A stretch of DNA of 59,429 bases, counting the filler, from Sluysia triapertura (taxonomy: Eukaryota), in NCBI GenBank assembly GCA_046118255.1. It is 4 parts of 4 records of this genome, joined end to end, with 100 filler letters (N's around TTAATTAATTAA, not from the genome) between each part and the next. Parts side by side here need not be neighbours in the genome. Positions count along the whole stretch, not along the records: positions 1 to 20,505 come from JBJNIA010017745.1; 3 more parts are not named here. One strand, 5' to 3'. The notes beneath the pieces were generated by a model, which did not search any database, was not told the DNA's origin, and worked only from the letters and a program-made list of their open reading frames with translations. Of this stretch, positions 468-19,618 are shown piece by piece (positions within the stretch are counted from its first letter, which is position 1; each line of letters opens with the position of its first letter). The translations under genes were made by a program, and so were the position numbers.

Positions 468-860
468 TTATATCGAAATCATTTTCTTTAAACTGTGAGG
501 GAAACTAATTGTATACACTCTAGGAATGGAAACCAATTCGTGTAATCTATGTGCATACGGACAGGCATTTCCATTATAGATGCATTCCCCTGTTATTAAA
601 ATTCCATATGGACATAATGCTGATTTGAAGAAACATGATTTATCGTATTCTTGCATTACATGGTACTTTATATTATCAATACTTGTAACATTGAACGATC
701 TAATTGGTCTGATCGAAGCATTAGATGGTTGCGTTACATTAAAAATTGACTGGTTGGTACGTGACGTGTTTAGGATAACACGTATTTTTTTAAATTCAAC
801 ATGTTTATTTGTTTCGCTTAACTCATCTATATTTTCGACAGCATTTTGTAAAATAATTTA
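468..860 (-). pseudogene. Cassette ORF-H copy A, with an intact C-x9-C-x6-C-x3-H zinc finger
   Basis: Frame open from about 860 to the stop at 468: FFKSALC-PYGILITGE-C-IYNGNA-C-PYA-H-RLHEL. Confidence 0.7.
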
Positions 861-2274: not shown

Positions 2275-3378
2275 ATGGTATCTGATCATTTTATTTTATC
2301 TCGTCAAATTTTCACCAAGCATAGCCGTTTACGAGACCAAAAAGTATATAATAATAAAGTACATTCTCTCGGATGGAGTGCAGATGGTTCTAAATTAGGT
2401 ACTGGATCTTCGGATCGGGCAATAAACATTTTTTACTTGGATAATTTTAGCTTGGTAAGTTTATTAGTTAAGGTCACATTTTGCTAAGACTAAAGGATCA
2501 ACAATTCGAGGTCATAGTAATGCAGTAGATCAATTAAGGTGGCATCCAACAGATTCTCATATTTTCAGTACGACGGGTGCAGATGGAAGTGTACGTTTAT
2601 GGGATACTCGTACATCAAATAAAACAATAGGAGTGATGCAAGGAAAAGGAGAAAATATAAATTTAGCCTGGTCTCCAGATGGAAGTACACTAGCAGTTGG
2701 TAATAAAGAAGATTTAGTAAGTTGGATAGATGTAAGAAAAATTCAAGAAACACTCCATTCCGAACAATTTAAATGCGAAATTAATGAATTTTCATGGAAC
2801 AATGATGGAAGTTATTTTGTACTTACTACAGGATTGGGAACGTTGTATTTTTACAGGTACAATTTTAAAATTATTTTATAGTTTAGCTTTCCCGAATTTA
2901 AACGCGAGTATACTTTAAAAGCTCATGCTGTTAATGCTATTTGTCTTCAGTTCGATCCTACTGGTCAGTATTTTGCTGTCGGGTCTGCTGATGCCCTTGT
3001 ATCTTTATGGGATATTGCTGAATTAGTAAGTACGAAAATTTTGTCTCGGTTAGTTGCTTATTTTGTTGTGACACCACTTATAGATTAGAATGGCCTTTGA
3101 GAACAGTTGGTTTTTCTTTCGATGGTCGTTTAATTGCTAGTGGTAGTGAGGATCATTTCATTGATATTGCTGAAGTTGAAAGTGGAGCTCAAGTATATAA
3201 GTTAAATACTAATTCAGCTGCATTTGCATTGGCCTGGCATCCACGTGAGTATTTGTTTGCATTTTCTTCAGATGACAAAAGCAATGAACGTGATAGAGAA
3301 CAAGGTAGTGTTCGTATGTTTGGGGTTTTTCAATCTACAGAAGGATATTTCACAAATAAGAATCGATTTTTGAAATAA
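2275..3378 (+). CDS. THOC3: THO complex subunit 3 (TEX1), WD40-repeat protein; exons 2275-2454, 2489-2856, 2887-3048, 3084-3378
   Basis: The spliced frame is continuous across three GT-AG introns (34, 30, 35 nt). Peptides KVHSLGWSADGSKLGTGSSDR, RGHSNAVDQLRWHP, KGENINLAWSPDG, QFKCEINEFSWNN, FDPTGQYFAVGSADALVSLWD and RLEWPLRTVGFSFDGRLIASGSEDHFIDIAEVESG match THOC3 as I recall it. Confidence 0.95.
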
Positions 3379-4189: not shown

Positions 4190-6172
4190 TAAATTCATTT
4201 GTTATGTATGTTAACAATTATAATGATTGTTATTTTAATGTGAGAACTAATTTAAGTAAAAGTAGATTGAGTTGAGTAAAGGAAAATAATAGATAATCAT
4301 AAATCAAATTTTTGTGTTTAGTACCTAACAAAGATTGACAGACTGTACCATATAATTGTCAAAGTTGTTATTGTAGGATTAATTCTCAAAGAATGTTGCG
4401 ATGATTTGTGTGAGAGAATATTTGATTAAAAAATTTAGGAATGATTAGAAAATATAAAAGGTTTACCTTAAAATTTTACTACACTTAATAATTTAAATGA
4501 GAAGTTCTATGTTTTAAGTAATTTTTTAATTTTAATAATTGAAAATAATATTACTTTTGTTGGGATTTTATAAAAAGGTTTTTTGTGTTTTGGAGAAATT
4601 TATATTTTATTATTAAGGAATAAGTGTGAATAATAGTTAATATTTTCATTTTATCTCTATTAATTATTTTATTTTGAACTGCTGTTAGGTGACGGTAGCT
4701 TTGAATGTTAGATTGACAATAAAAAGAATAGATAACTCAAGAGAAAATAATTGGAAGTACAATATATTGAATATAATTAAAGTTGTATCTTTTGGCTTTA
4801 TTTTAGAAATGTAATAAAAGAATTAAGACAAATTTGATAGTGCTGTGAGTTTCCTTAAACTTAAACCTATGGCAAAATAAAAATGAACAGGGTACGCTTA
4901 CAACTAGTAGTTGGCACTTCAGTAACTAATAAGTGAATAATTCTTACCCTAACTTTTATTAACAAATTTTAAATAATTATAATAAAAATAAGAGAATTAA
5001 AATTTCGATGAAATATTTAATTTAGTTAAGAATTTTAATATTATAAAGCTCCTCTCAATACATCGAAGGCACAAATAAATAACGCAAGATTTTAAAATTT
5101 TTATCTTCGAGAAGATAAAAACTCCCTGGACATGGATGATAGATACAGTTTCCAGATACATTAGATAACATATCCTCGGAGCTAGATAATAATTGAAATT
5201 GATAATGAATATTATTAAACTGGCTGATGATTAAAATAACAGTATACTTAAAATATCTTAATATTAAAATGGCGATTTTAATTAAACTGATGCTAGTTTA
5301 TGTACCAGTCATTAGCCAATGAAAATCGATGGAATGCTCTAGAAGCTTCTATTCTATTTATAGAGAATAATTTTCTTTTTTTTGAAAAAAATGTTTTTGG
5401 ATATTTGGAAACTCTAAAATATTTTTGATAATTTTAGGGATTGTGATAGCAACCTATCAATAGAAATAAGGAGTCATTAAATTAATTTTTTATAAGTGAA
5501 GAAAATTCTTTGTGATAATTTATTTTAGATTTTAACACTTATTAAATTAAAATTCAGTAAGATTTTAAGTTAAGTTTGCTTTAATATTAAATTATTGTTA
5601 TAAATAATTAAGATCTAACAACATATACATTGTTGGGACTAGTGAAGGATAAGGAGAAACATAAGGGTCATGAATAAGCAAATACATACACAGTTTCAAA
5701 TTTAACACAACATTCCGCATTCAAAAGTTATTCACAAAAACGTACTTTTTCTTAATTAAGTTAATTAAGATTTTAATTAATTAATCTATTTTTAGACTTA
5801 ATCTTATTTTATGTTTAGCAATTCAGTAATTTATAAGGCATTCAGGAGGCTGTAGATGTTTTCATCCTCATCTTTCTTATTCCTACTTCTACATCTTCAT
5901 GTTAATTATTACCATACTAGATTTTATTTCTTAAATATTTTAAAGATTACTCGAAGATCTTAGATACTTATCGATGTTTCAAGAATGCTTAAACAATTTT
6001 GACAATTACTTGGTACGATCTGTCAAACTTCATTAGGTGCAAAACACAAAAATTTGATTTATTATCAACCATAGTTTTCTTATACTCTACTCAATCTATT
6101 TTTAATTAATTACTTCTCACAATAAAATAATAATCAATAATATTGTTAACATACATAAAAATAATGAATTTA
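4190..6172. repeat. Diverged inverted repeat pair, about 4190-4365 and 5995-6172
   Basis: aaatcaaatttttgtgttt / aaacacaaaaatttgattt, tatgtatgttaacaat / attgttaacatacata and taattgtcaaa / tttgacaatta occur in mirrored order. Confidence 0.8.
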
Positions 6173-9100
6173 ATTTCTATTTTTAGAATTTAATTGATTT
6201 TCGATTTTTCACACCCAATTTTCTAATTTTAAGGTTCTTATTCTCAAACAATGCATTCTACAAACATTTTAAACTCACTTCTAGATTCTTCTCTCTCATA
6301 GGAATCATTTCTTATTCCATTCATTATAAATATAAAATAATCAACATTCCATAATTAGTTATTGTCGATCTAATTCTCGAAAAGGCTTTGATTATTAGTG
6401 TAAAACTCAGGATTGATTGGAAAATGAGAGTATAAAATGAAAAACTTAAAAACAGCAATATGATCAAGAAGATCTATGAGTTAAGTATTTTATTTAAGAT
6501 TTAATAATTTTATTTTTGTTTTTAATTTTATTATTTTTATTTTTGGTGAGGTCGAAGTAGAAGTTAATTTTTTATAAACTCAAAATTTAATAAAACTACT
6601 GAAAATTTGTATTTTATTTTTTAAATAAGTTAAACAAATAATTATATTAACTAATGAAAACTTTATAACCATTAATGATTTACAAACGAATAAGTTGAAC
6701 AAACAAATCCAAACTTTATTAAAAATTATTGTAAAAAACAGCATGAAAAATATAATTATACCAATATTGATGACATAAAGTTCACTTAGATTTTCTACTA
6801 AGGGTTCGATCAATTCCACAACTAGCCTGTCTACATAAGCACGATCGAATATTGAAACATAATGTTAAGAACTTGGTTCCTTACATATCAAAGGATATTT
6901 GTATAAAAAATTTGAAACTCAACCTAATTTTTAAGCATATTAGAAAAGCACAAATGAAAAGGTTGATTCTTTTGAGCTAAAACAAAGTTAATATTTTCAT
7001 TAAAATATTTCCGAAAATAATACCATTCTTTTAATATTGCAAGAATAAATGTAAATAAATAAATGTATATGCTAAGTAATGCTAGAATAAAAACTTAAAA
7101 TATATCGGTGAGTTCACCAACGTCTTGGTCTTACCGACTTAACGGCCAAGCGTTGGATTTTAACATGAAAGTAGAAAATGGAGGTCAAGATAAATTTAGG
7201 CTTAAATTTTTTAATACAATTTCAACTTTAAAAATCAATTTAAATAAAATATCAAATGGTTTAATTAAGTCAATAATTTTTTGGGCTATTCGGATTTTAT
7301 ATTGATTTTAATTTAAATTTTGAAAATCCTATAGAAAATGATTTTTCTTAGGTTTGAATATACAAACCTTTCGAAATAAGCAGTTTACTTGGGTTCAAAT
7401 AAACTGAACCCTTAAAGAATTTTAGATTATTTTTCTTAGGTTCTTTCTCGAACCTGTACAATTTTAAATTAATATCAACAAAAATGATAGAAAGTTATAT
7501 TAATCAAAAAATGTAATAAAAGTTAAATACACAACTTATTTTTATAATAATATAATTTTTACAAGGAAAAATAATTAAATTTACACGGATTATTATGATA
7601 ATCTTTATAATAATGATTTTAGAATAGATTTTTCTTTGTTTTCATGAAAGAAAACGAAACTTTTTTAAATTATATTTTACGTGGATTTTTCTTAGCAATT
7701 GTTAATAATTGCGAAAATCTTATCAAAATAGACTAACAGTAACAAGTAACAGTGAATTGATAGTTTCAATAATTTGATGAATTGTGTGATTGTAACGTTA
7801 TCGACGATTCCTTTCTTGGAACGATCCAAAAAATTGAATATAAAATAACAATTTGAAACTCTGCGTTGAAGATGTCAGAAAAATCTTAGCAAGTGGCAAA
7901 TTATAAATTACAATTGTAATCGTACTAATTGTGAAAATTATGGATTGTATAGGTCTATTTATATTCAAATCTTATCTGTTAAGGTTAGTCCACTTAAACA
8001 AAATTTATCACTTAAACAAAATTTAAATTTAATAAAATTTTCATAAATAATTAAATTTCATAATAATAAAAGTTTTATAAACAGATTTAATAATTTAATA
8101 ATTTAATAATAAATATAACAATAATCGAGCTTACCAATTTGGAGGTTTGATGACAAAATATATTTCCAGAATAATTGAAATATTTAAAAATTTGAAATAA
8201 TAATAAAACTTTTTAAAATTAATTTGAAATAATAATTTATATTTTTAAAATAGTGAAAATTCTATTTGAATTGTTTATATTATATCTAATTTTCGAACTT
8301 TTAAAACTAATTGTGCTGACGTAAATTTTAAACTTTAAAACGTAAACTTTAAACTCAACTTTTACAAGTTATACGCTACATATATTCTTATTAACGTCAA
8401 TATAGAAATTGTAATATTGCAGGAGAATGATGTCATTTTGTTGATGAAGTTATGAGTGATTTAAATTATTTGATTTAACAGAAGAAATAGTGCAACACAA
8501 CACATATCAAAGAATTAGAAACCAATATTATAGGGTAAATAAAAATTATGATCATTCATATTAACAATGTTAATGTATTAATAAAGAAATGCATGGACTA
8601 ATAAGTGAAGTAAAGAAAAATTTTACATAGAACAAAAAGACCAATGATTTTATTAAAATAGAAATGAAGAGATAAATATAATCTAGTACAAATAAACCAA
8701 CCAACCAGAAATTAAATGAAAATGAATGTACAAGTGAAAACACATATTGCAGTAAAAATAAAGATTTAAAGATGAAATTGACCACATTATCGAGACAATA
8801 TTTAATGAAGTTAGTTAAGTGTAGAAAGAAACTGTTCACATAATAGATTCAATTGTTATAGAATGCGATTTAAGTATGATTGTTACTTAAATTGAATTAT
8901 TTAAATTGCAGTTATTGGTCTTGGTATAATATTAATGAATAATATAATATAAATAATAAAAAAGTAACATTAATTAAAAAAGAAACTAATTAATTAATAC
9001 TTTTTGATTTACAAAAATTATTAGAACAAATTTTGGTTTACAATAAATAGTTCAATTTGTTTTTATTAATTAAATTTTAAATGTGAATATTTTATTATGA

Positions 9101-9639: not shown

Positions 9640-10050
9640 AATTATTTCTGTAAAATTTCATCAATAAATCTTTGTGGTGGTCAAATTTTAATTAACAAAT
9701 TTTATTAAAATTTTTTTCCCTTTAATACCTTCAAAATCTACAATTCAAAATTTTAAAATTTATTATAAACACTTTCATACATAGTTCAATACTAACATAA
9801 CCAAAATCATATTTTTCAACATCACACAATTACGTTTTAGAATATACCAAAATTTAGACTATAATTTATCTTCTTTACATTCACTAAACTACATTTTTTC
9901 AATACATCTTTAAATCACAATCTCCTAACATCCAAATATTACTTCCATTCAAAACATCAATGCATATTTAAAAATTCACATAAAACATTTATATTATTTC
10001 AAAATTCTTAAGTCACAAGTTTTAAACACCTAAACTATCAAATATACACC
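9640..10050 (-). pseudogene. Cassette partner ORF-P copy B, unknown protein, divergent from ORF-H copy B
   Basis: About 80 nt align colinearly by eye with 42720-42865 on the same strand: ICIDVLNGSNIWMLGDCDLKMY vs MCIDGLDENVILML*DYEFKVF. Confidence 0.6.
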
Positions 10051-10267
10051 AAACTAATCCAAAATAATTTCATTTAATATATCCAGAAAAAAGAAATTTA
10101 TTAAAGAAAGATCATGTTCTTCTGTTTCAAGAGATTTATGCAATTTATGATTAATAATAATAATAATAACATTATTATTATTATTATCACCATTTTTAAT
10201 TTCACAATTAATTATTTTCGTAACTACCACTATCAAGGGAGACATTTTTAAATTCATATGTACAGTA

Positions 10268-10452
10268 TTGTCACCACTCATAGTGGTTAGAGTTGACTGG
10301 AAGTAATTAGTATTATTATTGATCGTCCAACCAGAGTAGCTCTGTTCATTATTTTTATCACTCTGGTTGAACGGCCAATGGAAATTTGTTATTGGATATC
10401 ATGCGTTTAATGTGAGGTAGAAGTGAGTAATTTTATTAATTCGTCAATTAAT
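10268..10452. promoter_or_regulatory. Candidate bidirectional promoter/spacer of cassette B
   Basis: 14-bp inverted repeat CGTCCAACCAGAGT (10324-10337) / ACTCTGGTTGAACG (10360-10373, 1 mismatch), CCAAT and ATTGG boxes, TGTCACCA and TTCGTCAATTAA. Confidence 0.45.
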
Positions 10453-10472
10453 GTAAAATTTCTCTTATTAAT

Positions 10473-11912
10473 GTGTATTTTAAACAGTCAATGAATTATA
10501 GAAATCATGAAAATATTATTTTAATTTGTCAAAGAATTGAATCACTTGGTCTTGCTAAGAGTTCCTTAAAAAATCAGATGTTAACAACATTGCCATCAAT
10601 TGCAATATCTTTTCATTATTTGTTTGGTAATTTTAGATTTTTGCATAATTTGAGATATGATGAAGTAAATGATACGTTTTATAGTTATTCAGTCGAGTCT
10701 TGGTTTGTTTCACCAAGTCGTACTTTATCTCGAGATTTGAATAAATTTCTACATATTTATAAAAATGATTCGAATTATATGGAAACATTACAACCGACCT
10801 CCAAAGATTTAGTGTACTATATTGACATAACAGATTATGATGCTAATCGAAAGTGTTCTTCAAAACCATATATGTATAAAAATTGTTGGATTTTGATTAC
10901 TGCAGAAATGAAGATATTGCATTGTATTCTATCGGAAGACTTTTGTTTCAAACATATTTTGTGCGTATTTTCAGTAAGAGGAGCTATTCATTGATGGGTT
11001 CCTGATGATGCGGTCAAGTTATTAGATGTCAATCAGCTTAGTAATTTAATAGATTTTATAAGTCGTTGTAAGCAAGGCAGTTTTAAATCAAAAATGAATA
11101 ATAAATCTAAAGATAACGTTTATCCAGTTTTAACAGTTAGTACAGTAATACACACAAATGATTTTAATATATCTGTTTTGGTAAGTTAAAAAATGTTAGA
11201 AGATACTGTAAGAACGAAATATATTTCAGATAACTTACCTAATTCACTTTTGTACGTCCGAGATGATTCTCAATTCAAATGTTTTAAAATTGATAAAGCA
11301 AGCAATGATTATAATAATGAATCATGAAAATGCTTATATATTAGTATTCTAAAAAAATTGATGAAATTCTCATTTATAATATTTATTTACATGTCCTTCA
11401 TCCAAGGCTCGATGTTAATGTTTCAAAAGAATTTATATCTAGAAATCTAAAACAAAAAGTAATGCAGGACAAGATGGTACTAAATCAAGCAGGGATGATC
11501 AAAATAATGATAAAAAGAATTTTGAGAATGCACAAATTAGTAGTTTCGTTCCAAAGTCAACAAAAAATAACTGTGCTGTCAGTATATATCGAAATAGCAA
11601 TTCGTTTAACATATTGTAAATTAGTATTCTTCCCTTACAAATCTAATCAGGATGGACAATGTTTAAAGTTTGGAAATAACTGTAGATTTGCGCATACAAT
11701 CGATCAAATTCAAGAACCAGAATTCAACAGTCTTCCAAGCATCACATCGCAATAGATTAAATGATCTAATATCTACTCAGTTTATTAAGACCGACGATTA
11801 TCAAACCACAAAGTCAGTTGGAGAAATGAACGACGCTGAGTGTAATAAAGTAATAATAGTTTATAAATTTAATATCGAACTGAATATAATAAGACGAGAT
11901 GGCATATTTTAA
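10473..11912 (+). pseudogene. Cassette ORF-H copy B: degenerate DEAD-box RecA1-like region plus CCCH finger
   Basis: Motif-like segments in DEAD-box order: RIESLGLAKSSLKNQMLTTLPSI (Q motif), WFVSPSRTLSRDL (Ia), CWILITAE (Ib/Ic) and WVPDDAVKLLD (II). Then F-PYKSNQDGQ-C-LKFGNN-C-RFA-H, with the first Cys lost. Multiple stops and frameshifts. Confidence 0.65.
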
Positions 11913-13274
11913 AAAGTACAAAAACATTTAATATAATTTTGGTATTTTTTAATAAATTTAGGAGTTTTTATATCATTTTTTTCAATTTATGTAAATTAAA
12001 AGTAAAGTTTTCAATCAATCTAAAACAAGAAACTTTGTATTTTATAATTTTCAAAAATTCTAATAAATTTAACAAGTTAATATTTAAAAAGTCATTACAA
12101 ATCTTAAGTTTTATTTCGTTGTGAATTTAAATTTTAGTTAAGAATTAATCTAGTTTAAATAATTATAAACATTTGTTTACTTTAAATAAGAAACTGCAGT
12201 AAAATGTACACAATTTAATATAAATTGATTGAGTTAAAATTAAAATCGTTTAGTTGGTTCATTTTAAAGAACTTGAGTTCCGTTTAATTAGAGAACCAAA
12301 GCAATATATTAATATTTAAACGAATCCATTTAATAAGGAATCAAAGTAAAATCACGATTTAACAAATTATTAACGGTTCTATTTAAGAAAGAACGAGAGA
12401 AAATTGATCATTGAGAATTTTAAGTTAAAACTTTAGTAAAATTTTAATAAGTTTGTATATTACTATTGGATGATAGTTACTATTCATATTAATCAGAGTG
12501 AGTAATTAAACATTCATAAATAAATATTCATATACTCATATCGTGCTTAATCCTTTCAGTATTCTACGGACATATTGTTCCAGAGAATTTCTAATAATTA
12601 CTAAAATAATTTAAATGCTTACAAATGCATTGAGGTCTGGGATTTTAGTCCCAATTATTATTTTGCAATAATCAATAAATAAAATGATCATTTATTTAAA
12701 TATTTATTTTTCCGGTCAAACTAAATCAGCAGTAAATATTACATGAATTAATAAAATAAAAAAATCGTATTGAAAGGGTTAAAAAATAATCTTGATAATT
12801 AAACACAAATAAAACAATTTTATCAATAATCAAAAATCATTTTAATAGCAAAAGATTTGTATTGATTTATTTTGTGTTAAATTTAGTAATACAAATTATT
12901 ATTTCATATTAATATTTTAATTAAACATTTCAATGAAAATAATTTAAAATAAAAGTATAATTTATATATTATTGAAGTATCTCATTCATTCATTGAAATA
13001 ACTAATAAAGTCCTAAAAAACAATAAATTACTTTTTACACAATTACTAAAATTAAAGAACTTTTAAAATCAATAATTTAAATATTAATTCTACTGGACCA
13101 TATGTCTAGTTTTAGAAACACTTATCAAAACAATGCTATTACTAATTCTATTGTTTAAGTTATATTTAGTAAATATAATATTTCTTATTTTACAAATATA
13201 TTATATGTTAAAATCAGATTTAGCTAAATATTTTATTAAATTTTTAGAGCTTTAAGTACAAAATAAAGTGTAAC

Positions 13275-15419: not shown

Positions 15420-15940
15420 ATGGATTTAAGTAATAATGAAACGTATCAAATCATGAAAAAACACATTTTGTATGTATATTACTACATATAACTTTAATAA
15501 GTGAGTATGGGGAAGCAGGATTAACGCAAACCAAATTTTGTAAATTAAAAAGTAGTAAAGTAGAAATAATAGGTAGAAATTGTCATGATGCGATTCATAT
15601 AAAAGTCAAATATTTTGTTAGATATTTTGAATCAACCAACATTTTTGATTCCAACTGCAAATGCTTTCTTGAAAAATTCAAGAAATAAGTCAAGTTTTTG
15701 TCATGTATATTATGCAGGTATATATTTGTCATGTATATTTGTCATGTATATTATAAAGTTGTTTTGACAGATGCGAAAATCAATGTGAAACGAGTTAAAG
15801 TTTATACATCAATATTAGTTGAACATCAATTAGGCACTCAAAAATCAAATGCAATTTATCTAATTTGTCAAACAAAACTTGTATTGTATAGTATACCAAA
15901 AGGACAACTTGGATTTTATAAAGATCAATTTTTTAGTTAA
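15420..15940 (+). pseudogene. Polinton major capsid protein fragments
   Basis: MDLSNNETY (compare IDLSNT.LY), GLTQTKFCKLKSSKVEIIGR and YKVVLTDAKINVKRVKVYTSILVEHQLGTQKSNAIYLICQTKLVLYSIPKGQLGFYKDQFF resemble Polinton MCP segments (YKV.I.DA.L.VRKVK....AH...L....A.YPI...K.F.IP.G...DNLF). Confidence 0.75.
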
Positions 15941-16357
15941 TCATCTTATTCAAATTTGTAGACATGCATATTTCATTAGTCAAAAAATATACTAACAAGT
16001 TGTTTCGGTCAGTTACTCATTTTACGGTTGTATTATCAATATTTGTATAAATAATTTTATTTAAATATATCTTAGTATATTAATAGACCTTTTATTGTTA
16101 CAGATTTCGTGTTAGAAATTCAGAAAATATTTGGATGACTTCAATTATAAAGATTATGAATTCTTTTGACTATATTTAATATATCAAAATTTGAAATAAT
16201 AAATAATTTACAGATAAATGTTTTTATAAATAATGATATTGATGAATATAATATCCATGTTAAGGTCGATATTTAAAAAATCAATATATTGATATATTAT
16301 ATAGAAATAAGTGTAATAATGAAAAAAATTATTAATTTATAATTATTCAATTTCTTA

Positions 16358-17130
16358 ATGAAGTGTTTAAGAGAATTTAGGACACATATCTCATTTAATA
16401 ATCATATTAAGTTATGCAGTAAAAATCATGAAGGAGATATTTTATGCACTGCGCCAATTGATAATAAATGTGAATATAATGATTACAGTAAATTAGTATC
16501 TTCATCATTTACTATTTATTCAAAATTTGAATCTGCATTACTACCAGACGAACAATATCAACAAAGACATCAACCATTAGCTGCAAGTTTGTTATTTGTA
16601 AGTCCAAAAACGGAATGGTGAATTCGAAACGACGTACTAATGTAAGACTTTCGTCGTACTACAAAAGAATTAATTACATAAACAAAAAAGCCAATTTTAA
16701 AAATTCAATTAAAGTTGCTGACAATTTGATTGCAGTTTTTCTAGGAATAGAAGTAGTGTGCTTAAAAATAGGACAAACTGTTTTAAATCTAAGTAGAATA
16801 AGAATTTAGCAAATCTAATATGAAGAATTAGAAAAATATCGTCAGAAATTTAATTGAAAAATTGAAATTATGGCTGATAATACTGATAGTTTCTTTATAA
16901 AATTCACTAATTCTAAATTATTTATTTTATTAAATATAATGATTAAAGATGAATTATTGGATAAGTCAAATCACGATACAAACCTTGTAACATAGATACA
17001 TAATAGGTAAATTTAAAGACAAGATAAAGGTAAGATAAAATATATTGTACAACTTATGCTTTAGATCAAAAACATCAATTTTATACATTCAAATCAACGT
17101 TTAGCTTATGGAGATGAATTTCGTAGCAAT
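16358..17130 (+). pseudogene. Protein-primed family B DNA polymerase (pPolB) remnant with a large internal deletion
   Basis: CLREF...NHIKLC zinc-finger-like start and FTIYSKFES (ExoI YADFES) run directly into KRRTNVRL...KANFKNSIKVADNLIAV...IGQTVLNLSR, then DNTDSF (DTDS), DKSNH, IGKFKD and LAYG at the C-terminus. Confidence 0.85.
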
Positions 17131-19189
17131 GAGAATTATGATGTTTTTGATGATGATTTTTAATAAATGTATTTATTTGTATTTTTTCTTACCGTTTATG
17201 TTTTAATATTAGTACTATACATTTTTATTAATACTACAGCTTTTACAGACGTTCAAGACTTGTGATTATATATTAAGAATATGAAGGTAATTTCTATTAT
17301 TCTTAATATGTATTCATAGTTTTATATATATAGGTTTTGCGATGGTGATGATTTTTTGTAATTATTTCGTAATATTTACAAAGTCATTACAAGATTAGGT
17401 TGCATCATTCGGAGATGGAGTACGTAAACTGTGATATACTCAGAACTTTCGTAGACATATTAATCATGGGTATATAACACATAACATTATATATCACATT
17501 CTTCTCCAATCTATATAAATATGGTTGCTTAAAGTGACATGTGACTCACTTTTCTGATTAACTGACCTTGAATACTCTTAGTTTCATGCATTATATAAAT
17601 TAAATAATAAAAAATAACTTCCAATTAATTAACACCATATCCAAATTTAATGTAATACTTACTTTAATCAATATAAAACATAATAGCGAGCACGAATAAA
17701 CCATCAAGAGGTATCTCCATCTTCATCTTCCCGGATAAGAGAGTAGATTATTCAATGCGGACATTTTTATCTACTATAAATCAATGCGAGAAAAGTGCAG
17801 TAATAATTATTAAGATTAATAAATATTGATACTATTATCAGTTTTGCTAATTGAGCATACCAAAAACATTAAATAAAATATAAAACCCTTAAATAAAAAT
17901 ATAATCTATACGTAAAAGTACTTTTAACTATGATTATTATAAAAATAATAGTAAGTTTGAGATAATTTCTATTTAAACATTTGAGATTTAATATTTAACT
18001 ATTAAGTTAATATTTTATAAAAAAAAACTATAAAGTCTGACAATATGACATTTGGTTAAAATTATTTATTATATTTTGTTGTCGAATATGACAATTTAAG
18101 AATTAATTATTTCAGATATCACATATAAGATAATGTCCAAATATTACTAACATTATTTATATTTCAATTTTTTCAAGAAAAATTAAATTAATAATTCATT
18201 GTTTTATTCGTTATACTACATTGATTCAATGATCAATTATTGAACTATTATGTTTGAAAAAAATATGGCGACTACAGTAGTAAAATAAACAATAAAATCT
18301 GTCTATCATTTTCTTAAAAGGTAGTCTCATTCAGTAGTTAATTCTTTATTACGAAATTACTACATAGTTAAATTTACAATAAATGATACATGATGAACCA
18401 ATTAAATATTCATAATAAAAGAATTAAATCTGAATAGTGTAATTAAATATAATTTAAAAAAAATTAATTTTGTTTTATTTTTTAGTTTTAATTTTCTGGT
18501 TTCATTTTCATTAGTCTAATTTACTTAATCAATGATATATCTTTATGTCCAATAGAAAAAGAACCATTTTAGTATAAAGTTAATTTAACGTGTAATTTAT
18601 TTTTGTTTTAATCAATCAATTTCACAGAAAATAATGGCTGAAGCATTGTAAAATTTGTTATTTAAAAAGAAACAAAAAGTTAAGAAATAATTTCATGAGC
18701 AATGAAATAATATATACTTGTATAAGGAAATAAAAAGAATTTAAGTCGAATGCGTTCGATAATAAAAGTAAATAAACAAAGTAATGACTCTCAGAAAAAT
18801 TGCGACTCTTTGCGAATGATTTGTCTGGTTAACATATGAAGACAAATTGAAGAATAGAGCATGTCAAATATTCTTTCTTCAAAAGAAATATTTTTAGGTT
18901 TAGTAAATCTTGGCAAAAATGCATCGAACGTAATAATTTCTTGGTTCTGTCTTTTCTTTTTCTTCAAGTGTAATGACGATATGTGGTTCAATTTAAAATA
19001 AACTGGAAGATTTTTTTCAAATGTTTCTTTTTTTATTGAAACGTTTAAATTGTTTTAATAGGTTTAAAAATTTGTCATACATTTGACTGATGATATAAAA
19101 TTCATATTTTAATACCAAAAAATCAAATAATAATAAATTAATAAATGTTTTTCGGTTTATTGGTTTATTTTATTTAATATTTAGCTTAC

Positions 19190-19618
19190 TTCACTTTCAG
19201 TATTTTCTAATGTTTGTCTACTATCTTCTTTTTTAAGCAGTTTCTTTAATTTTATATTTTCCGAATTACTGTTCTGAGTTATATCCGCTTCATTATTATT
19301 TGTATTATATTTATTATCATTGTTATTGGTTTTGTCAATACTTATGTTATTGTTACTATTATTATTGTTGTCATTATTTAAATTTTTATTTTCTTTAATT
19401 TTCTTTTTTTTCTTAGCATTTAACTTCAGTTTATAATCTTTTGAAGTCAATTTTTTCTTTCTTAATTGTTCTTTTTGTGTTTCTCGATCTAGTGCCGCCA
19501 CTTCTTCTTCGTAAGACATTGTAACAACAGCCAACATCAAATTAATTAAATAAAATGATCCGAAAAATACAACGAATATAAAAAAAAGAATATTCCAAGA
19601 TCCAGTGGCACGAATTAC
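19190..19618 (-). CDS. Internal exon of a four-domain voltage-gated Na+-type channel alpha subunit (Nav2/DSC1-like): domain I S6 plus start of the I-II linker
   Basis: AG acceptor at 19620-19619 and GTAAGC donor at 19189. Translation [39 protein letters not shown] carries the Nav IS6 signature ([19 protein letters not shown]), followed by an Asn/Lys-rich linker. Confidence 0.9.

What the first reader, a model, noticed from the sequence alone, without database searches (positions are those of the whole stretch)
9640..11912. Recurrent head-to-head two-gene cassette: DEAD-box-derived/CCCH ORF paired with an unknown ORF
Seen: the same divergent layout occurs at 9.6-11.9 kb and 42.6-44.7 kb, inverted at 25.5-27.5 kb, and possibly at 51.5-53.6 kb. 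One arm (ORF-H) has DEAD-box-like motifs in order and, in most copies, a CCCH finger. The other arm (ORF-P) is homologous between copies at DNA and peptide level. An ATT/AAT-rich tract lies between the arms each time. Copies appear intronless and broken, lie in either orientation in introns or between genes, and are spread over separate contigs. Established: I know of no transposon class defined by a half DEAD-box helicase plus CCCH finger. Inference: an undescribed mobile unit, an endogenised ambisense viral genome, or a birth-and-death gene pair that duplicates as a block. I found no transposase, integrase, TIR or TSD.
Basis: partly seen in the sequence, partly recalled or inferred. Interest (0 to 1): 0.9.

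Follow-up and report, generated by a model that had tools for sequence, protein, structure and literature searches.

The report
Broken primase-derived gene beside orphan ORF
The supposed half DEAD-box helicase is a broken, intronless, strongly degenerate relative of the eukaryotic DNA primase small subunit carrying a CCCH-type zinc finger, set head-to-head with an orphan reading frame; it has no close relative in public data, and whether it is a repeated or mobile unit cannot be tested from this piece.

Summary
The two-arm layout is present at 9.6-11.9 kb, but the domain call was wrong. ORF-H (+ strand) is not DEAD-box-derived. It matches the eukaryotic DNA primase small subunit (PRIM1/Pri1): Pfam PF01896 above cut-off, solved PRIM1 chains at E 1.7e-12, and colinear similarity to about three quarters of PRIM1 with no introns. 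No Walker A, DEAD or SAT motif occurs in any frame.

A CCCH-like finger (C-x14-C-x6-C-x3-H, below Pfam cut-offs) shares one uninterrupted 136-codon frame with the primase motif-III region. ORF-H has a few stops and at least one frameshift. It keeps only 20 of 39 positions that real PRIM1s almost never change, and the canonical C-terminal third was not detected. It therefore looks like a long-diverged, probably non-catalytic PRIM1 derivative that broke recently.

ORF-P (- strand, 114 codons open) is longer than chance predicts but has no homologue, family or confident fold. Neither arm has a close relative among about 15 billion public proteins. This piece holds no second copy, transposase, integrase, convincing TIR or viral hallmark gene. 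Recurrence, the core of the claim, could not be tested.

The parts
9681..10085 (-). G-poor tract on the + strand, so nearly C-free on the ORF-P sense strand. It starts directly 3' of ORF-P's stop. Its nature is unknown: 3' UTR, a decayed continuation of ORF-P, or a separate repeat.
   Evidence: 7 G against about 75 C in 405 nt. GC skew falls to -0.84, the most extreme value in the window. All minus-strand frames here are full of stops.
10054..10398 (-). ORF-P: an orphan open frame of 114 codons plus stop. The first ATG gives 75 aa.
   Evidence: Its length is unlikely by chance. No Pfam family at E<=1, no solved-structure relative at E<=10, no homologue in the word-indexed search of 5.8 billion clusters. 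The AlphaFold2 single-sequence model has pLDDT 37.5.
10282..10490 (.). Spacer between the first ATGs of the two arms. It holds a hairpin at 10324-10373, with perfect 10-bp arms at 10328-10337 and 10360-10369 and a 22-nt loop.
   Evidence: The ssDNA fold gives -19.4 kcal/mol and z -3.1; 1 of 200 shuffles folds as well. GC is 0.31, so it is not more AT-rich than background. Significance is marginal.
10491..11912 (+). ORF-H: a broken, intronless gene with a PRIM1-like domain followed by a CCCH-like finger. The frame that carries the finger ends at 11755; an overlapping open frame runs on to 11912.
10581..11431 (+). Primase small subunit (AEP, PRIM1/Pri1-like) region. The bounds are the outer limits of similarity, covering roughly PRIM1 residues 36-322 of about 420.
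   Evidence: PF01896 E 3.6e-6, 27.9 bits against a cut-off of 26.8. Solved PRIM1/Pri1 chains E 1.7e-12. tblastn with 51 full-length PRIM1 representatives, E to 5e-21, colinear. A profile of 29 PRIM1 relatives matches three pieces in order: profile positions 93-169, 171-230 and 291-314 of 412. Foldseek's top 14 hits are all PRIM1, but weak.
11615..11695 (+). CCCH-like zinc finger, C-x14-C-x6-C-x3-H.
   Evidence: PF25427 zf-CCCH_UNK E 6.9e-5 (23.1 bits, cut-off 31.1), with four other CCCH families at E 0.002-0.45. Solved CCCH proteins match only weakly, E 0.035-1.9. The finger lies in the same uninterrupted 136-codon frame as the primase motif-III region.

Best explanation
ORF-H is a dead or dying copy of a lineage-specific gene derived from the eukaryotic DNA primase small subunit (PRIM1, AEP fold).

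Shown:
- It is homologous and colinear with PRIM1 from near the N-terminus to the motif-III region.
- It has no introns in a genome whose genes have many short introns.
- No similarity was detected to the C-terminal third, which in canonical PRIM1 follows motif III.
- A CCCH-like finger follows the motif-III region in the same open frame.
- About half of the positions that real PRIM1s hold nearly invariant have changed, including positions in the catalytic motifs and the zinc knuckle.

Inferred:
- The frame carries only a handful of breaks, where unconstrained sequence of this composition would carry about forty stops. The gene was therefore kept open by selection long after it stopped looking like an active primase.
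- It most likely encoded a non-catalytic nucleic-acid-binding protein, with the AEP scaffold plus the CCCH finger as the binding parts. It broke only recently, or some breaks are assembly errors.
- ORF-P is a formerly coding orphan partner transcribed divergently from a spacer of about 210 nt.
- If the pair does recur in the genome, it most likely spreads as a block by DNA-level duplication or as passive cargo. It carries no recognisable mobility enzyme of its own.
For: - PRIM1 homology.
- No introns and colinear, against three introns of about 30-60 nt in the neighbouring THOC3.
- Finger in the same open frame as motif III.
- Only 20 of 39 family-conserved columns kept, against 33-39 (at most 7 changed) for each of 29 real PRIM1s.
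- No similarity to PRIM1 beyond about residue 322; only a non-significant 1.2-bit match in another frame.
- Few breaks against 43-55 stops per 517 codons in the other two frames.
- ORF lengths beyond chance.
- GC-skew flip at the spacer.
- No transposase, integrase or viral domains in any ORF tested.
Against: - There is only one copy to look at, so neither past selection nor duplication as a block is shown directly.
- The CCCH match is below every Pfam cut-off.
- Breaks could be assembly errors, in which case the gene may be intact.
- ORF-P has no support other than its length and the skew.
- None of the best 150 PRIM1 relatives has a CCCH pattern, so the fusion has no precedent to lean on.
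- A fast-evolving host lineage could inflate the apparent loss of conserved residues.
Confidence: 0.45

Rival explanations
1. Fragment of an endogenised large DNA virus or other DNA virus that encoded a PRIM1-like primase. The pair is two neighbouring viral genes now decaying in the host genome.
For: - Intronless ORFs in an intron-dense genome, a close-packed head-to-head layout, and an orphan neighbour.
- PRIM1-like small-subunit genes occur on dense, virus-like metagenome contigs. One example is a 264-aa PF01896 protein beside an intein-bearing 1754-aa gene on a 73-kb contig.
Against: - ORF-H is no closer to that protein (33% identity, 61 bits) than to cellular PRIM1s of insects, a mite, chytrids and a foraminifer (about 46% over the core, 62 bits).
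- The two top hits examined sit beside housekeeping genes on compact, apparently cellular contigs.
- No viral hallmark domain was found in any ORF tested across the 20.5 kb.
Confidence: 0.15
2. Processed (retro-copied) pseudogene of a host PRIM1 or PRIM1 paralogue that landed next to an unrelated open frame. The pairing with ORF-P is incidental.
For: Colinear with the protein, no introns, broken.
Against: - No poly(A) tract at the 3' end.
- The finger is fused in frame.
- Divergence from every PRIM1 is far too large for a copy with so few stops.
- ORF-P's length and the mirrored GC skew argue for a real second unit.
- A retrocopy would not carry an upstream divergent gene.
Confidence: 0.15
3. 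A small autonomous replicon or mobile element of about 2.3 kb. A single-chain primase, with the AEP domain plus a zinc finger as in PrimPol/UL52-type enzymes, would start its replication. ORF-P would be a structural or accessory protein, and the hairpin-bearing spacer would serve as origin and promoter.
For: - The layout resembles small ambisense DNA viruses.
- The AEP-plus-C-terminal-zinc-finger architecture is how stand-alone primases are built. This is established knowledge of PrimPol and herpesvirus UL52 and was not tested here.
- A hairpin lies in the spacer.
Against: - Catalytic-motif and zinc-knuckle positions are not conserved.
- There are no convincing terminal repeats. The best flank pair scores 20 against shuffles of 14.8 +/- 1.5 and lies in a tandem repeat.
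- No relatives appear in the protein collections or in metagenome contigs.
- The hairpin is only marginally significant.
Confidence: 0.08
4. The host's own functional PRIM1 gene. The apparent breaks would be very short introns or assembly errors in a fast-evolving, AT-rich genome.
For: - Introns in this genome are tiny.
- ORF-H is about as long as PRIM1.
- It has few breaks.
Against: - Two of the stops lie inside gap-free alignment to PRIM1.
- No similarity was detected to the C-terminal third that in canonical PRIM1 follows motif III.
- 19 of 39 near-invariant positions are changed, against at most 7 in any real PRIM1.
Confidence: 0.07

Closest known systems
Eukaryotic DNA primase small subunit (PRIM1 / Pri1 / PriS; Pfam PF01896, AEP superfamily)
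   Same: Significant, colinear sequence similarity from near the N-terminus to the motif-III region, 35-50% identity over the core. Overall length is similar.
   Different: It has no introns and is broken. Half of the near-invariant positions are changed. Two of the four zinc-knuckle cysteines are not conserved. The canonical C-terminal third is not detectable. A CCCH-like finger is present that none of the best 150 relatives has.
PrimPol / herpesvirus UL52-type primases (AEP domain followed by a C-terminal zinc finger)
   Same: Order of modules: AEP catalytic fold, then a zinc finger. This comparison rests on my own knowledge of those families.
   Different: The AEP part here is of the PRIM1 type. 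The finger is CCCH-like, not the UL52 type. No such protein came back as a hit in any search, so this is an analogy of architecture only.
PRIM1-like small-subunit genes on giant-virus-like metagenome contigs (for example the 264-288 aa cluster of P0088/P0203)
   Same: Short, intronless PF01896 proteins. They align to ORF-H over the longest stretch, 33% over 164 aa.
   Different: They are no closer than cellular PRIM1s, have no finger, and show no shared neighbours.
Unkempt-like / tandem CCCH zinc fingers (PF25427, PF00642)
   Same: Cys/His spacing within the broad CCCH definition. The best family matches are CCCH families.
   Different: All scores are below the curated cut-offs. There is a single finger, fused to a primase-like domain.
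DEAD-box helicases
   Same: Only a short acidic motif that looks superficially alike.
   Different: No Walker A, DEAD/DEAH or SAT motif and no helicase family hit.
Small ambisense DNA viruses (Rep and Cap diverging from a hairpin origin)
   Same: Size of about 2.3 kb, two divergent ORFs, a hairpin in the spacer.
   Different: No HUH Rep and no SF3 helicase. No capsid-like fold could be assigned to ORF-P: its model is low-confidence and no fold search was run on it. The hairpin loop was not shown to match any origin motif, and it is chromosomal with no detectable ends.

Membership tests
DNA primase small subunit (PRIM1/PriS, PF01896) | Sequence match to the family model above its curated cut-off | tested here: met
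   27.9 bits against a cut-off of 26.8, E 3.6e-6, for the first open piece. Solved PRIM1 chains E 1.7e-12. Profile of 29 relatives E 5.6e-26.
DNA primase small subunit (PRIM1/PriS, PF01896) | Complete set of catalytic motif residues (motifs I, II, III) | tested here: not met
   All three motif regions can be found in order. Motifs I and II each carry changes at positions that are 100% conserved in 29 relatives. The motif-III region is present.
DNA primase small subunit (PRIM1/PriS, PF01896) | Four-cysteine zinc knuckle | tested here: not met
   Two of the four cysteine columns are conserved in ORF-H.
DNA primase small subunit (PRIM1/PriS, PF01896) | Conserved C-terminal third after motif III | tested here: not met
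   No tblastn or profile match beyond about residue 322. The only trace is a 1.2-bit match in another frame.
DNA primase small subunit (PRIM1/PriS, PF01896) | Intact reading frame | tested here: not met
   Stops and at least one frameshift. Assembly error is not excluded.
DEAD-box helicase | Walker A, DEAD and SAT motifs in order; helicase core family match | tested here: not met
   None of the motifs occurs in any frame of 10400-11950. No helicase family matched at E<=1 to 10.
CCCH zinc finger | C-x(4-15)-C-x(4-6)-C-x3-H spacing and a family match | tested here: inconclusive
   The spacing C-x14-C-x6-C-x3-H is met. Five CCCH families match, all below cut-off; the best is E 6.9e-5. Solved CCCH proteins match at E 0.035 or worse.
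Cut-and-paste or self-synthesising DNA transposon | Transposase or integrase, terminal inverted repeats, target-site duplication | tested here: not met
   No such domain was found in any ORF tested. The best inverted pair in the flanks is 35 nt at 86%, inside a tandem repeat, and only marginally above shuffles. TSDs cannot be sought without known ends.
Endogenous viral element | Closest relatives are viral; linked viral hallmark genes | tested here: not met
   The closest named relatives are cellular PRIM1s. No hallmark gene lies in the 20.5 kb. The viral-contig collection was not scanned (see referred steps).
   Only one copy lies in this piece. The source assembly is not among the searchable collections. 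The exact look-up, the protein searches and the metagenome scan were all empty.

The most novel reading that the evidence does not exclude
The pair is one decayed copy of an undescribed class of small (about 2-2.5 kb) eukaryotic mobile or episome-derived elements. Its founder would have encoded a single-chain PRIM1-type primase with a CCCH finger in place of the large-subunit-binding tail, plus one orphan protein, both transcribed outward from a hairpin-bearing spacer. That layout recalls small ambisense DNA viruses, but with an AEP primase where they have a HUH Rep.
Probability: 0.1. Interest if true: 0.85.

Novelty: new variant of a known kind. Interest (0 to 1): 0.45.

Why it matters
PRIM1 is normally a single-copy, intron-bearing housekeeping gene. 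It works only together with its large subunit.

This relative has no introns, has a finger fused to it, has lost much of the catalytic signature and has no relatives in about 15 billion proteins. It would be an unusual case of an essential replication enzyme being re-used.

The immediate value is a correction: the "DEAD-box transposon" idea should be dropped, and the question reframed as the origin and spread of a primase-derived gene pair.

Tried and rejected
- **DEAD-box reading:** rejected.
- **Ciliate-type code (TAA/TAG = Gln):** rejected. By my reading of the translations, all 15 Gln codons in the THOC3 and channel exons are CAA or CAG. THOC3 ends at a TAA near where the alignment to its relatives ends. 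With only TGA as stop, every frame is open, so that test says nothing.
- **Second copy in the piece:** none.
- **Terminal repeats:** only AT-rich pairs at chance level.
- **RNA genes:** no Rfam family and no tRNA in the window.
- **ORF-P:** no family, homologue, solved relative or confident fold.
- **ORF-H tail with the finger:** no homologue.
- **Exact look-up of the first ORF-H piece:** not on record.
- **Metagenome scan:** 136 pattern matches, none a relative.
- **Sigma-70 promoter scan:** run, but not relevant to a eukaryote.
- **Lead from memory:** I thought the ORF run at 15.4-16.8 kb might be a decayed protein-primed polymerase. It found no support.
- **Host identification:** failed. 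The THOC3 exon is at most 53-66% identical to anything. A Nav2/NavPaS-like channel exon suggests an animal. GC of about 23%, exon GC of 33-37% and introns of about 30-60 nt resemble published myxozoan figures (PMC12239612, PMC13644364) and not Dicyema (36.7% GC, PMC6736024). This is a lead only.
- **Literature searches:** no description of a PRIM1-CCCH unit was found.
  - No introns were modelled in ORF-H, because no tool predicts them and no relatives share them.
  - ORF-H was never read across a stop or frameshift.
  - No consensus of copies was built.
  - The THOC3 exons were searched singly, and the joined model was left out.

Full report
**Setting.** The piece (1-20505) has 23.6% GC and reads in the standard code.
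- A THOC3 gene at about 2276-3378 (+) is recognisable exon by exon (PF25174, E 5e-41 and 3e-22; tblastn with relatives). It has three introns of only about 30-60 nt, by my reading of the sequence. By my reading of the translations its Gln codons are all CAA or CAG, and it ends at TAA.
- An exon at 19184-19618 (-) matches domain I S6 of four-domain sodium channels, best to the cockroach NavPaS chain at E 1e-16.
- The host is therefore probably an AT-rich animal, but I could not name it. The THOC3 exon has no relative above 53-66% identity.
- Published figures for myxozoans are similar: exon GC about 37%, intron GC 19-26%, ultrashort introns in myxobolids (PMC12239612, PMC13644364). This is a lead, not an identification.
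- I searched the THOC3 exons singly and left out the joined spliced model.

**The observation.** The two arms are present.
- On the - strand a 114-codon frame is open (10057-10398).
- On the + strand, from the first ATG at 10491, open stretches of 180 and 136 codons plus shorter ones run to 11755, with an overlapping frame to 11912.
- In sequence of this composition only 0.14-0.32 frames of at least 114 codons are expected per 20.5 kb. The window has seven. Four are THOC3 (two), the channel exon and a CCCH ORF, and three lie in the cassette.
- GC skew is strongly negative over the ORF-P arm and positive over ORF-H, as it is over THOC3, and flips at the spacer.
- The spacer is not unusually AT-rich (GC 0.25-0.31).

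**What ORF-H is.**
- The first open piece hits Pfam DNA_primase_S above its cut-off. It also hits all solved eukaryotic primase small subunits (Xenopus, human, yeast, Tetrahymena entries) at E 1.7e-12 to 4e-9.
- Fifty-one full-length PRIM1 representatives were run by tblastn. The best-scoring ones listed align colinearly. Residues about 36-264 fall in one frame with no intron-sized gap. Residues about 285-322 fall in a second frame.
- A profile of 29 relatives matches three separate pieces in the right order.
- A model of the first piece was only moderately confident (pLDDT 56.7). Its 14 best Foldseek hits are all PRIM1, though weak.
- No helicase family matches, and no Walker A, DEAD/DEAH or SAT motif exists in any frame.

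**The finger.**
- The 136-codon piece that begins with the motif-III region also holds a C-x14-C-x6-C-x3-H motif (11615-11695).
- Five CCCH families match it, all below cut-off; the best is zf-CCCH_UNK at E 6.9e-5. Solved CCCH proteins match only weakly.
- Both features lie in one uninterrupted frame that chance would not keep open, so the fusion is probably real.
- None of the best 150 PRIM1 relatives has such a pattern.

**State of the gene.**
- Counts only: there are two in-frame stops inside the gap-free alignment to PRIM1. There is at least one frameshift, with one further stop in the frame that is left. There may be a second frameshift near the 3' end.
- The other two frames of the same stretch carry 43-55 stops per 517 codons, so ORF-H is far from random.
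- Yet in the first piece only 20 of 39 columns conserved in at least 85% of 29 real PRIM1s are kept. Each real PRIM1 keeps 33-39, with at most 7 changed. The changes include positions in catalytic motifs I and II and two of the four zinc-knuckle cysteines.
- Nothing resembling the conserved C-terminal third is detectable.
- Few stops together with heavy loss of family-invariant residues is best read as a PRIM1 derivative that was kept as a coding gene after losing primase features, and that broke recently or is partly mis-assembled. This is inference from a single copy.

**ORF-P and its flank.**
- ORF-P has no family, no homologue, no solved relative and no confident fold.
- Directly 3' of its stop lies a 405-nt tract (9681-10085) with 7 G against about 75 C on the + strand, the most extreme skew in the window.
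- I cannot say whether this tract is a UTR, a decayed continuation of ORF-P or a separate repeat.
- The spacer holds a perfect 10-bp hairpin (z -3.1) of marginal significance.

**Relatives elsewhere.**
- A full HMMER pass over 1.84 billion representatives gave no hit better than 62 bits, 46% identity over 70 residues.
- Named hits are cellular PRIM1s of a mite, a chytrid, a beetle, crickets and a foraminifer. Two top hits sit beside housekeeping genes.
- A 264-aa PRIM1-like gene on a dense 73-kb, virus-like metagenome contig aligns over a longer stretch, but at 33% identity.
- The word-indexed searches with ORF-P and with the finger piece, the exact look-up and the metagenome scan were all empty.
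- ORF-H therefore cannot be assigned a cellular or a viral source.

**Mobility.**
- There is no second copy in the piece.
- No transposase, integrase or viral hallmark domain was found in any ORF tested.
- The best inverted pair in the flanks is a 35-nt AT-rich match inside a tandem repeat.

**Verdict.** The finding is real sequence, wrongly named. It is a broken, intronless, degenerate PRIM1-CCCH gene head-to-head with an orphan ORF. That is a new variant of a known protein family. Whether it forms a duplicating unit is open, and that question decides whether the finding is merely odd or important.

**Slips and omissions.**
- I noted places of some breaks in my reasoning. My checkpoint note gives the bounds of two open pieces that I used as query references. 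One search printed three-frame translations with stops marked.
- One search printed the commonest residue of 29 PRIM1 relatives at 39 conserved columns beside ORF-H's residue. I used only the counts.
- I did not scan the viral-contig collection, did not read ORF-H across any break, and built no consensus.

Noticed in passing
window 471-857 (-): A 129-codon open frame with an Unkempt-like CCCH finger (PF25427, E 1.3e-5, below cut-off). Its finger region resembles the ORF-H finger: blastp E 5e-5, and Smith-Waterman score 57 against 29 +/- 5 for shuffles. No primase-like sequence lies next to it. It may be a host CCCH gene exon or the source or relative of the ORF-H finger.
   Followed up: partly
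window 9681-10085: A nearly G-free tract on the + strand: 7 G against about 75 C, GC skew to -0.84. It has a sharp boundary at the 3' end of ORF-P. The cause is unexplained; a strand-specific mutational bias or a distinct repeat are both possible.
   Followed up: partly
window 4190-4369 and 5992-6172: The only DNA repeat in the piece: a 182-bp inverted pair at 83% identity, about 1.6 kb apart. Both copies lie in strongly GC-skewed sequence. They may be two copies of a short repeat or the ends of an element of about 2 kb.
   Followed up: no
window 10324-10373: A hairpin with a perfect 10-bp stem and a 22-nt loop between the two arms. The region folds better than 199 of 200 shuffles.
   Followed up: partly
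window 2276-3378 (+): A THOC3 gene with very short introns (about 30-60 nt, GTAAGT...AG), exon GC of 33-37% and a TAA stop.
   Followed up: partly
window 19184-19618 (-): An exon for domain I S6 and an Asn/Lys-rich linker of a Nav2/NavPaS-like four-domain channel. No further channel exon was recognisable on the - strand down to 3.5 kb. The cassette may therefore lie in a very long intron or downstream of a gene fragment.
   Followed up: partly
window 15440-16806 (+): A run of 82-92-codon open frames, two of them in one frame separated by a single stop. It suggests another decayed gene, but there is no Pfam or solved-structure match.
   Followed up: partly
L001 (ENA metagenome contig, 73 kb), gene at 6001-6795: A 264-aa PRIM1-like gene sits among densely packed genes, including an intein-bearing 1754-aa product. 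This looks like a giant-virus-type contig. I did not analyse it further.
   Followed up: no
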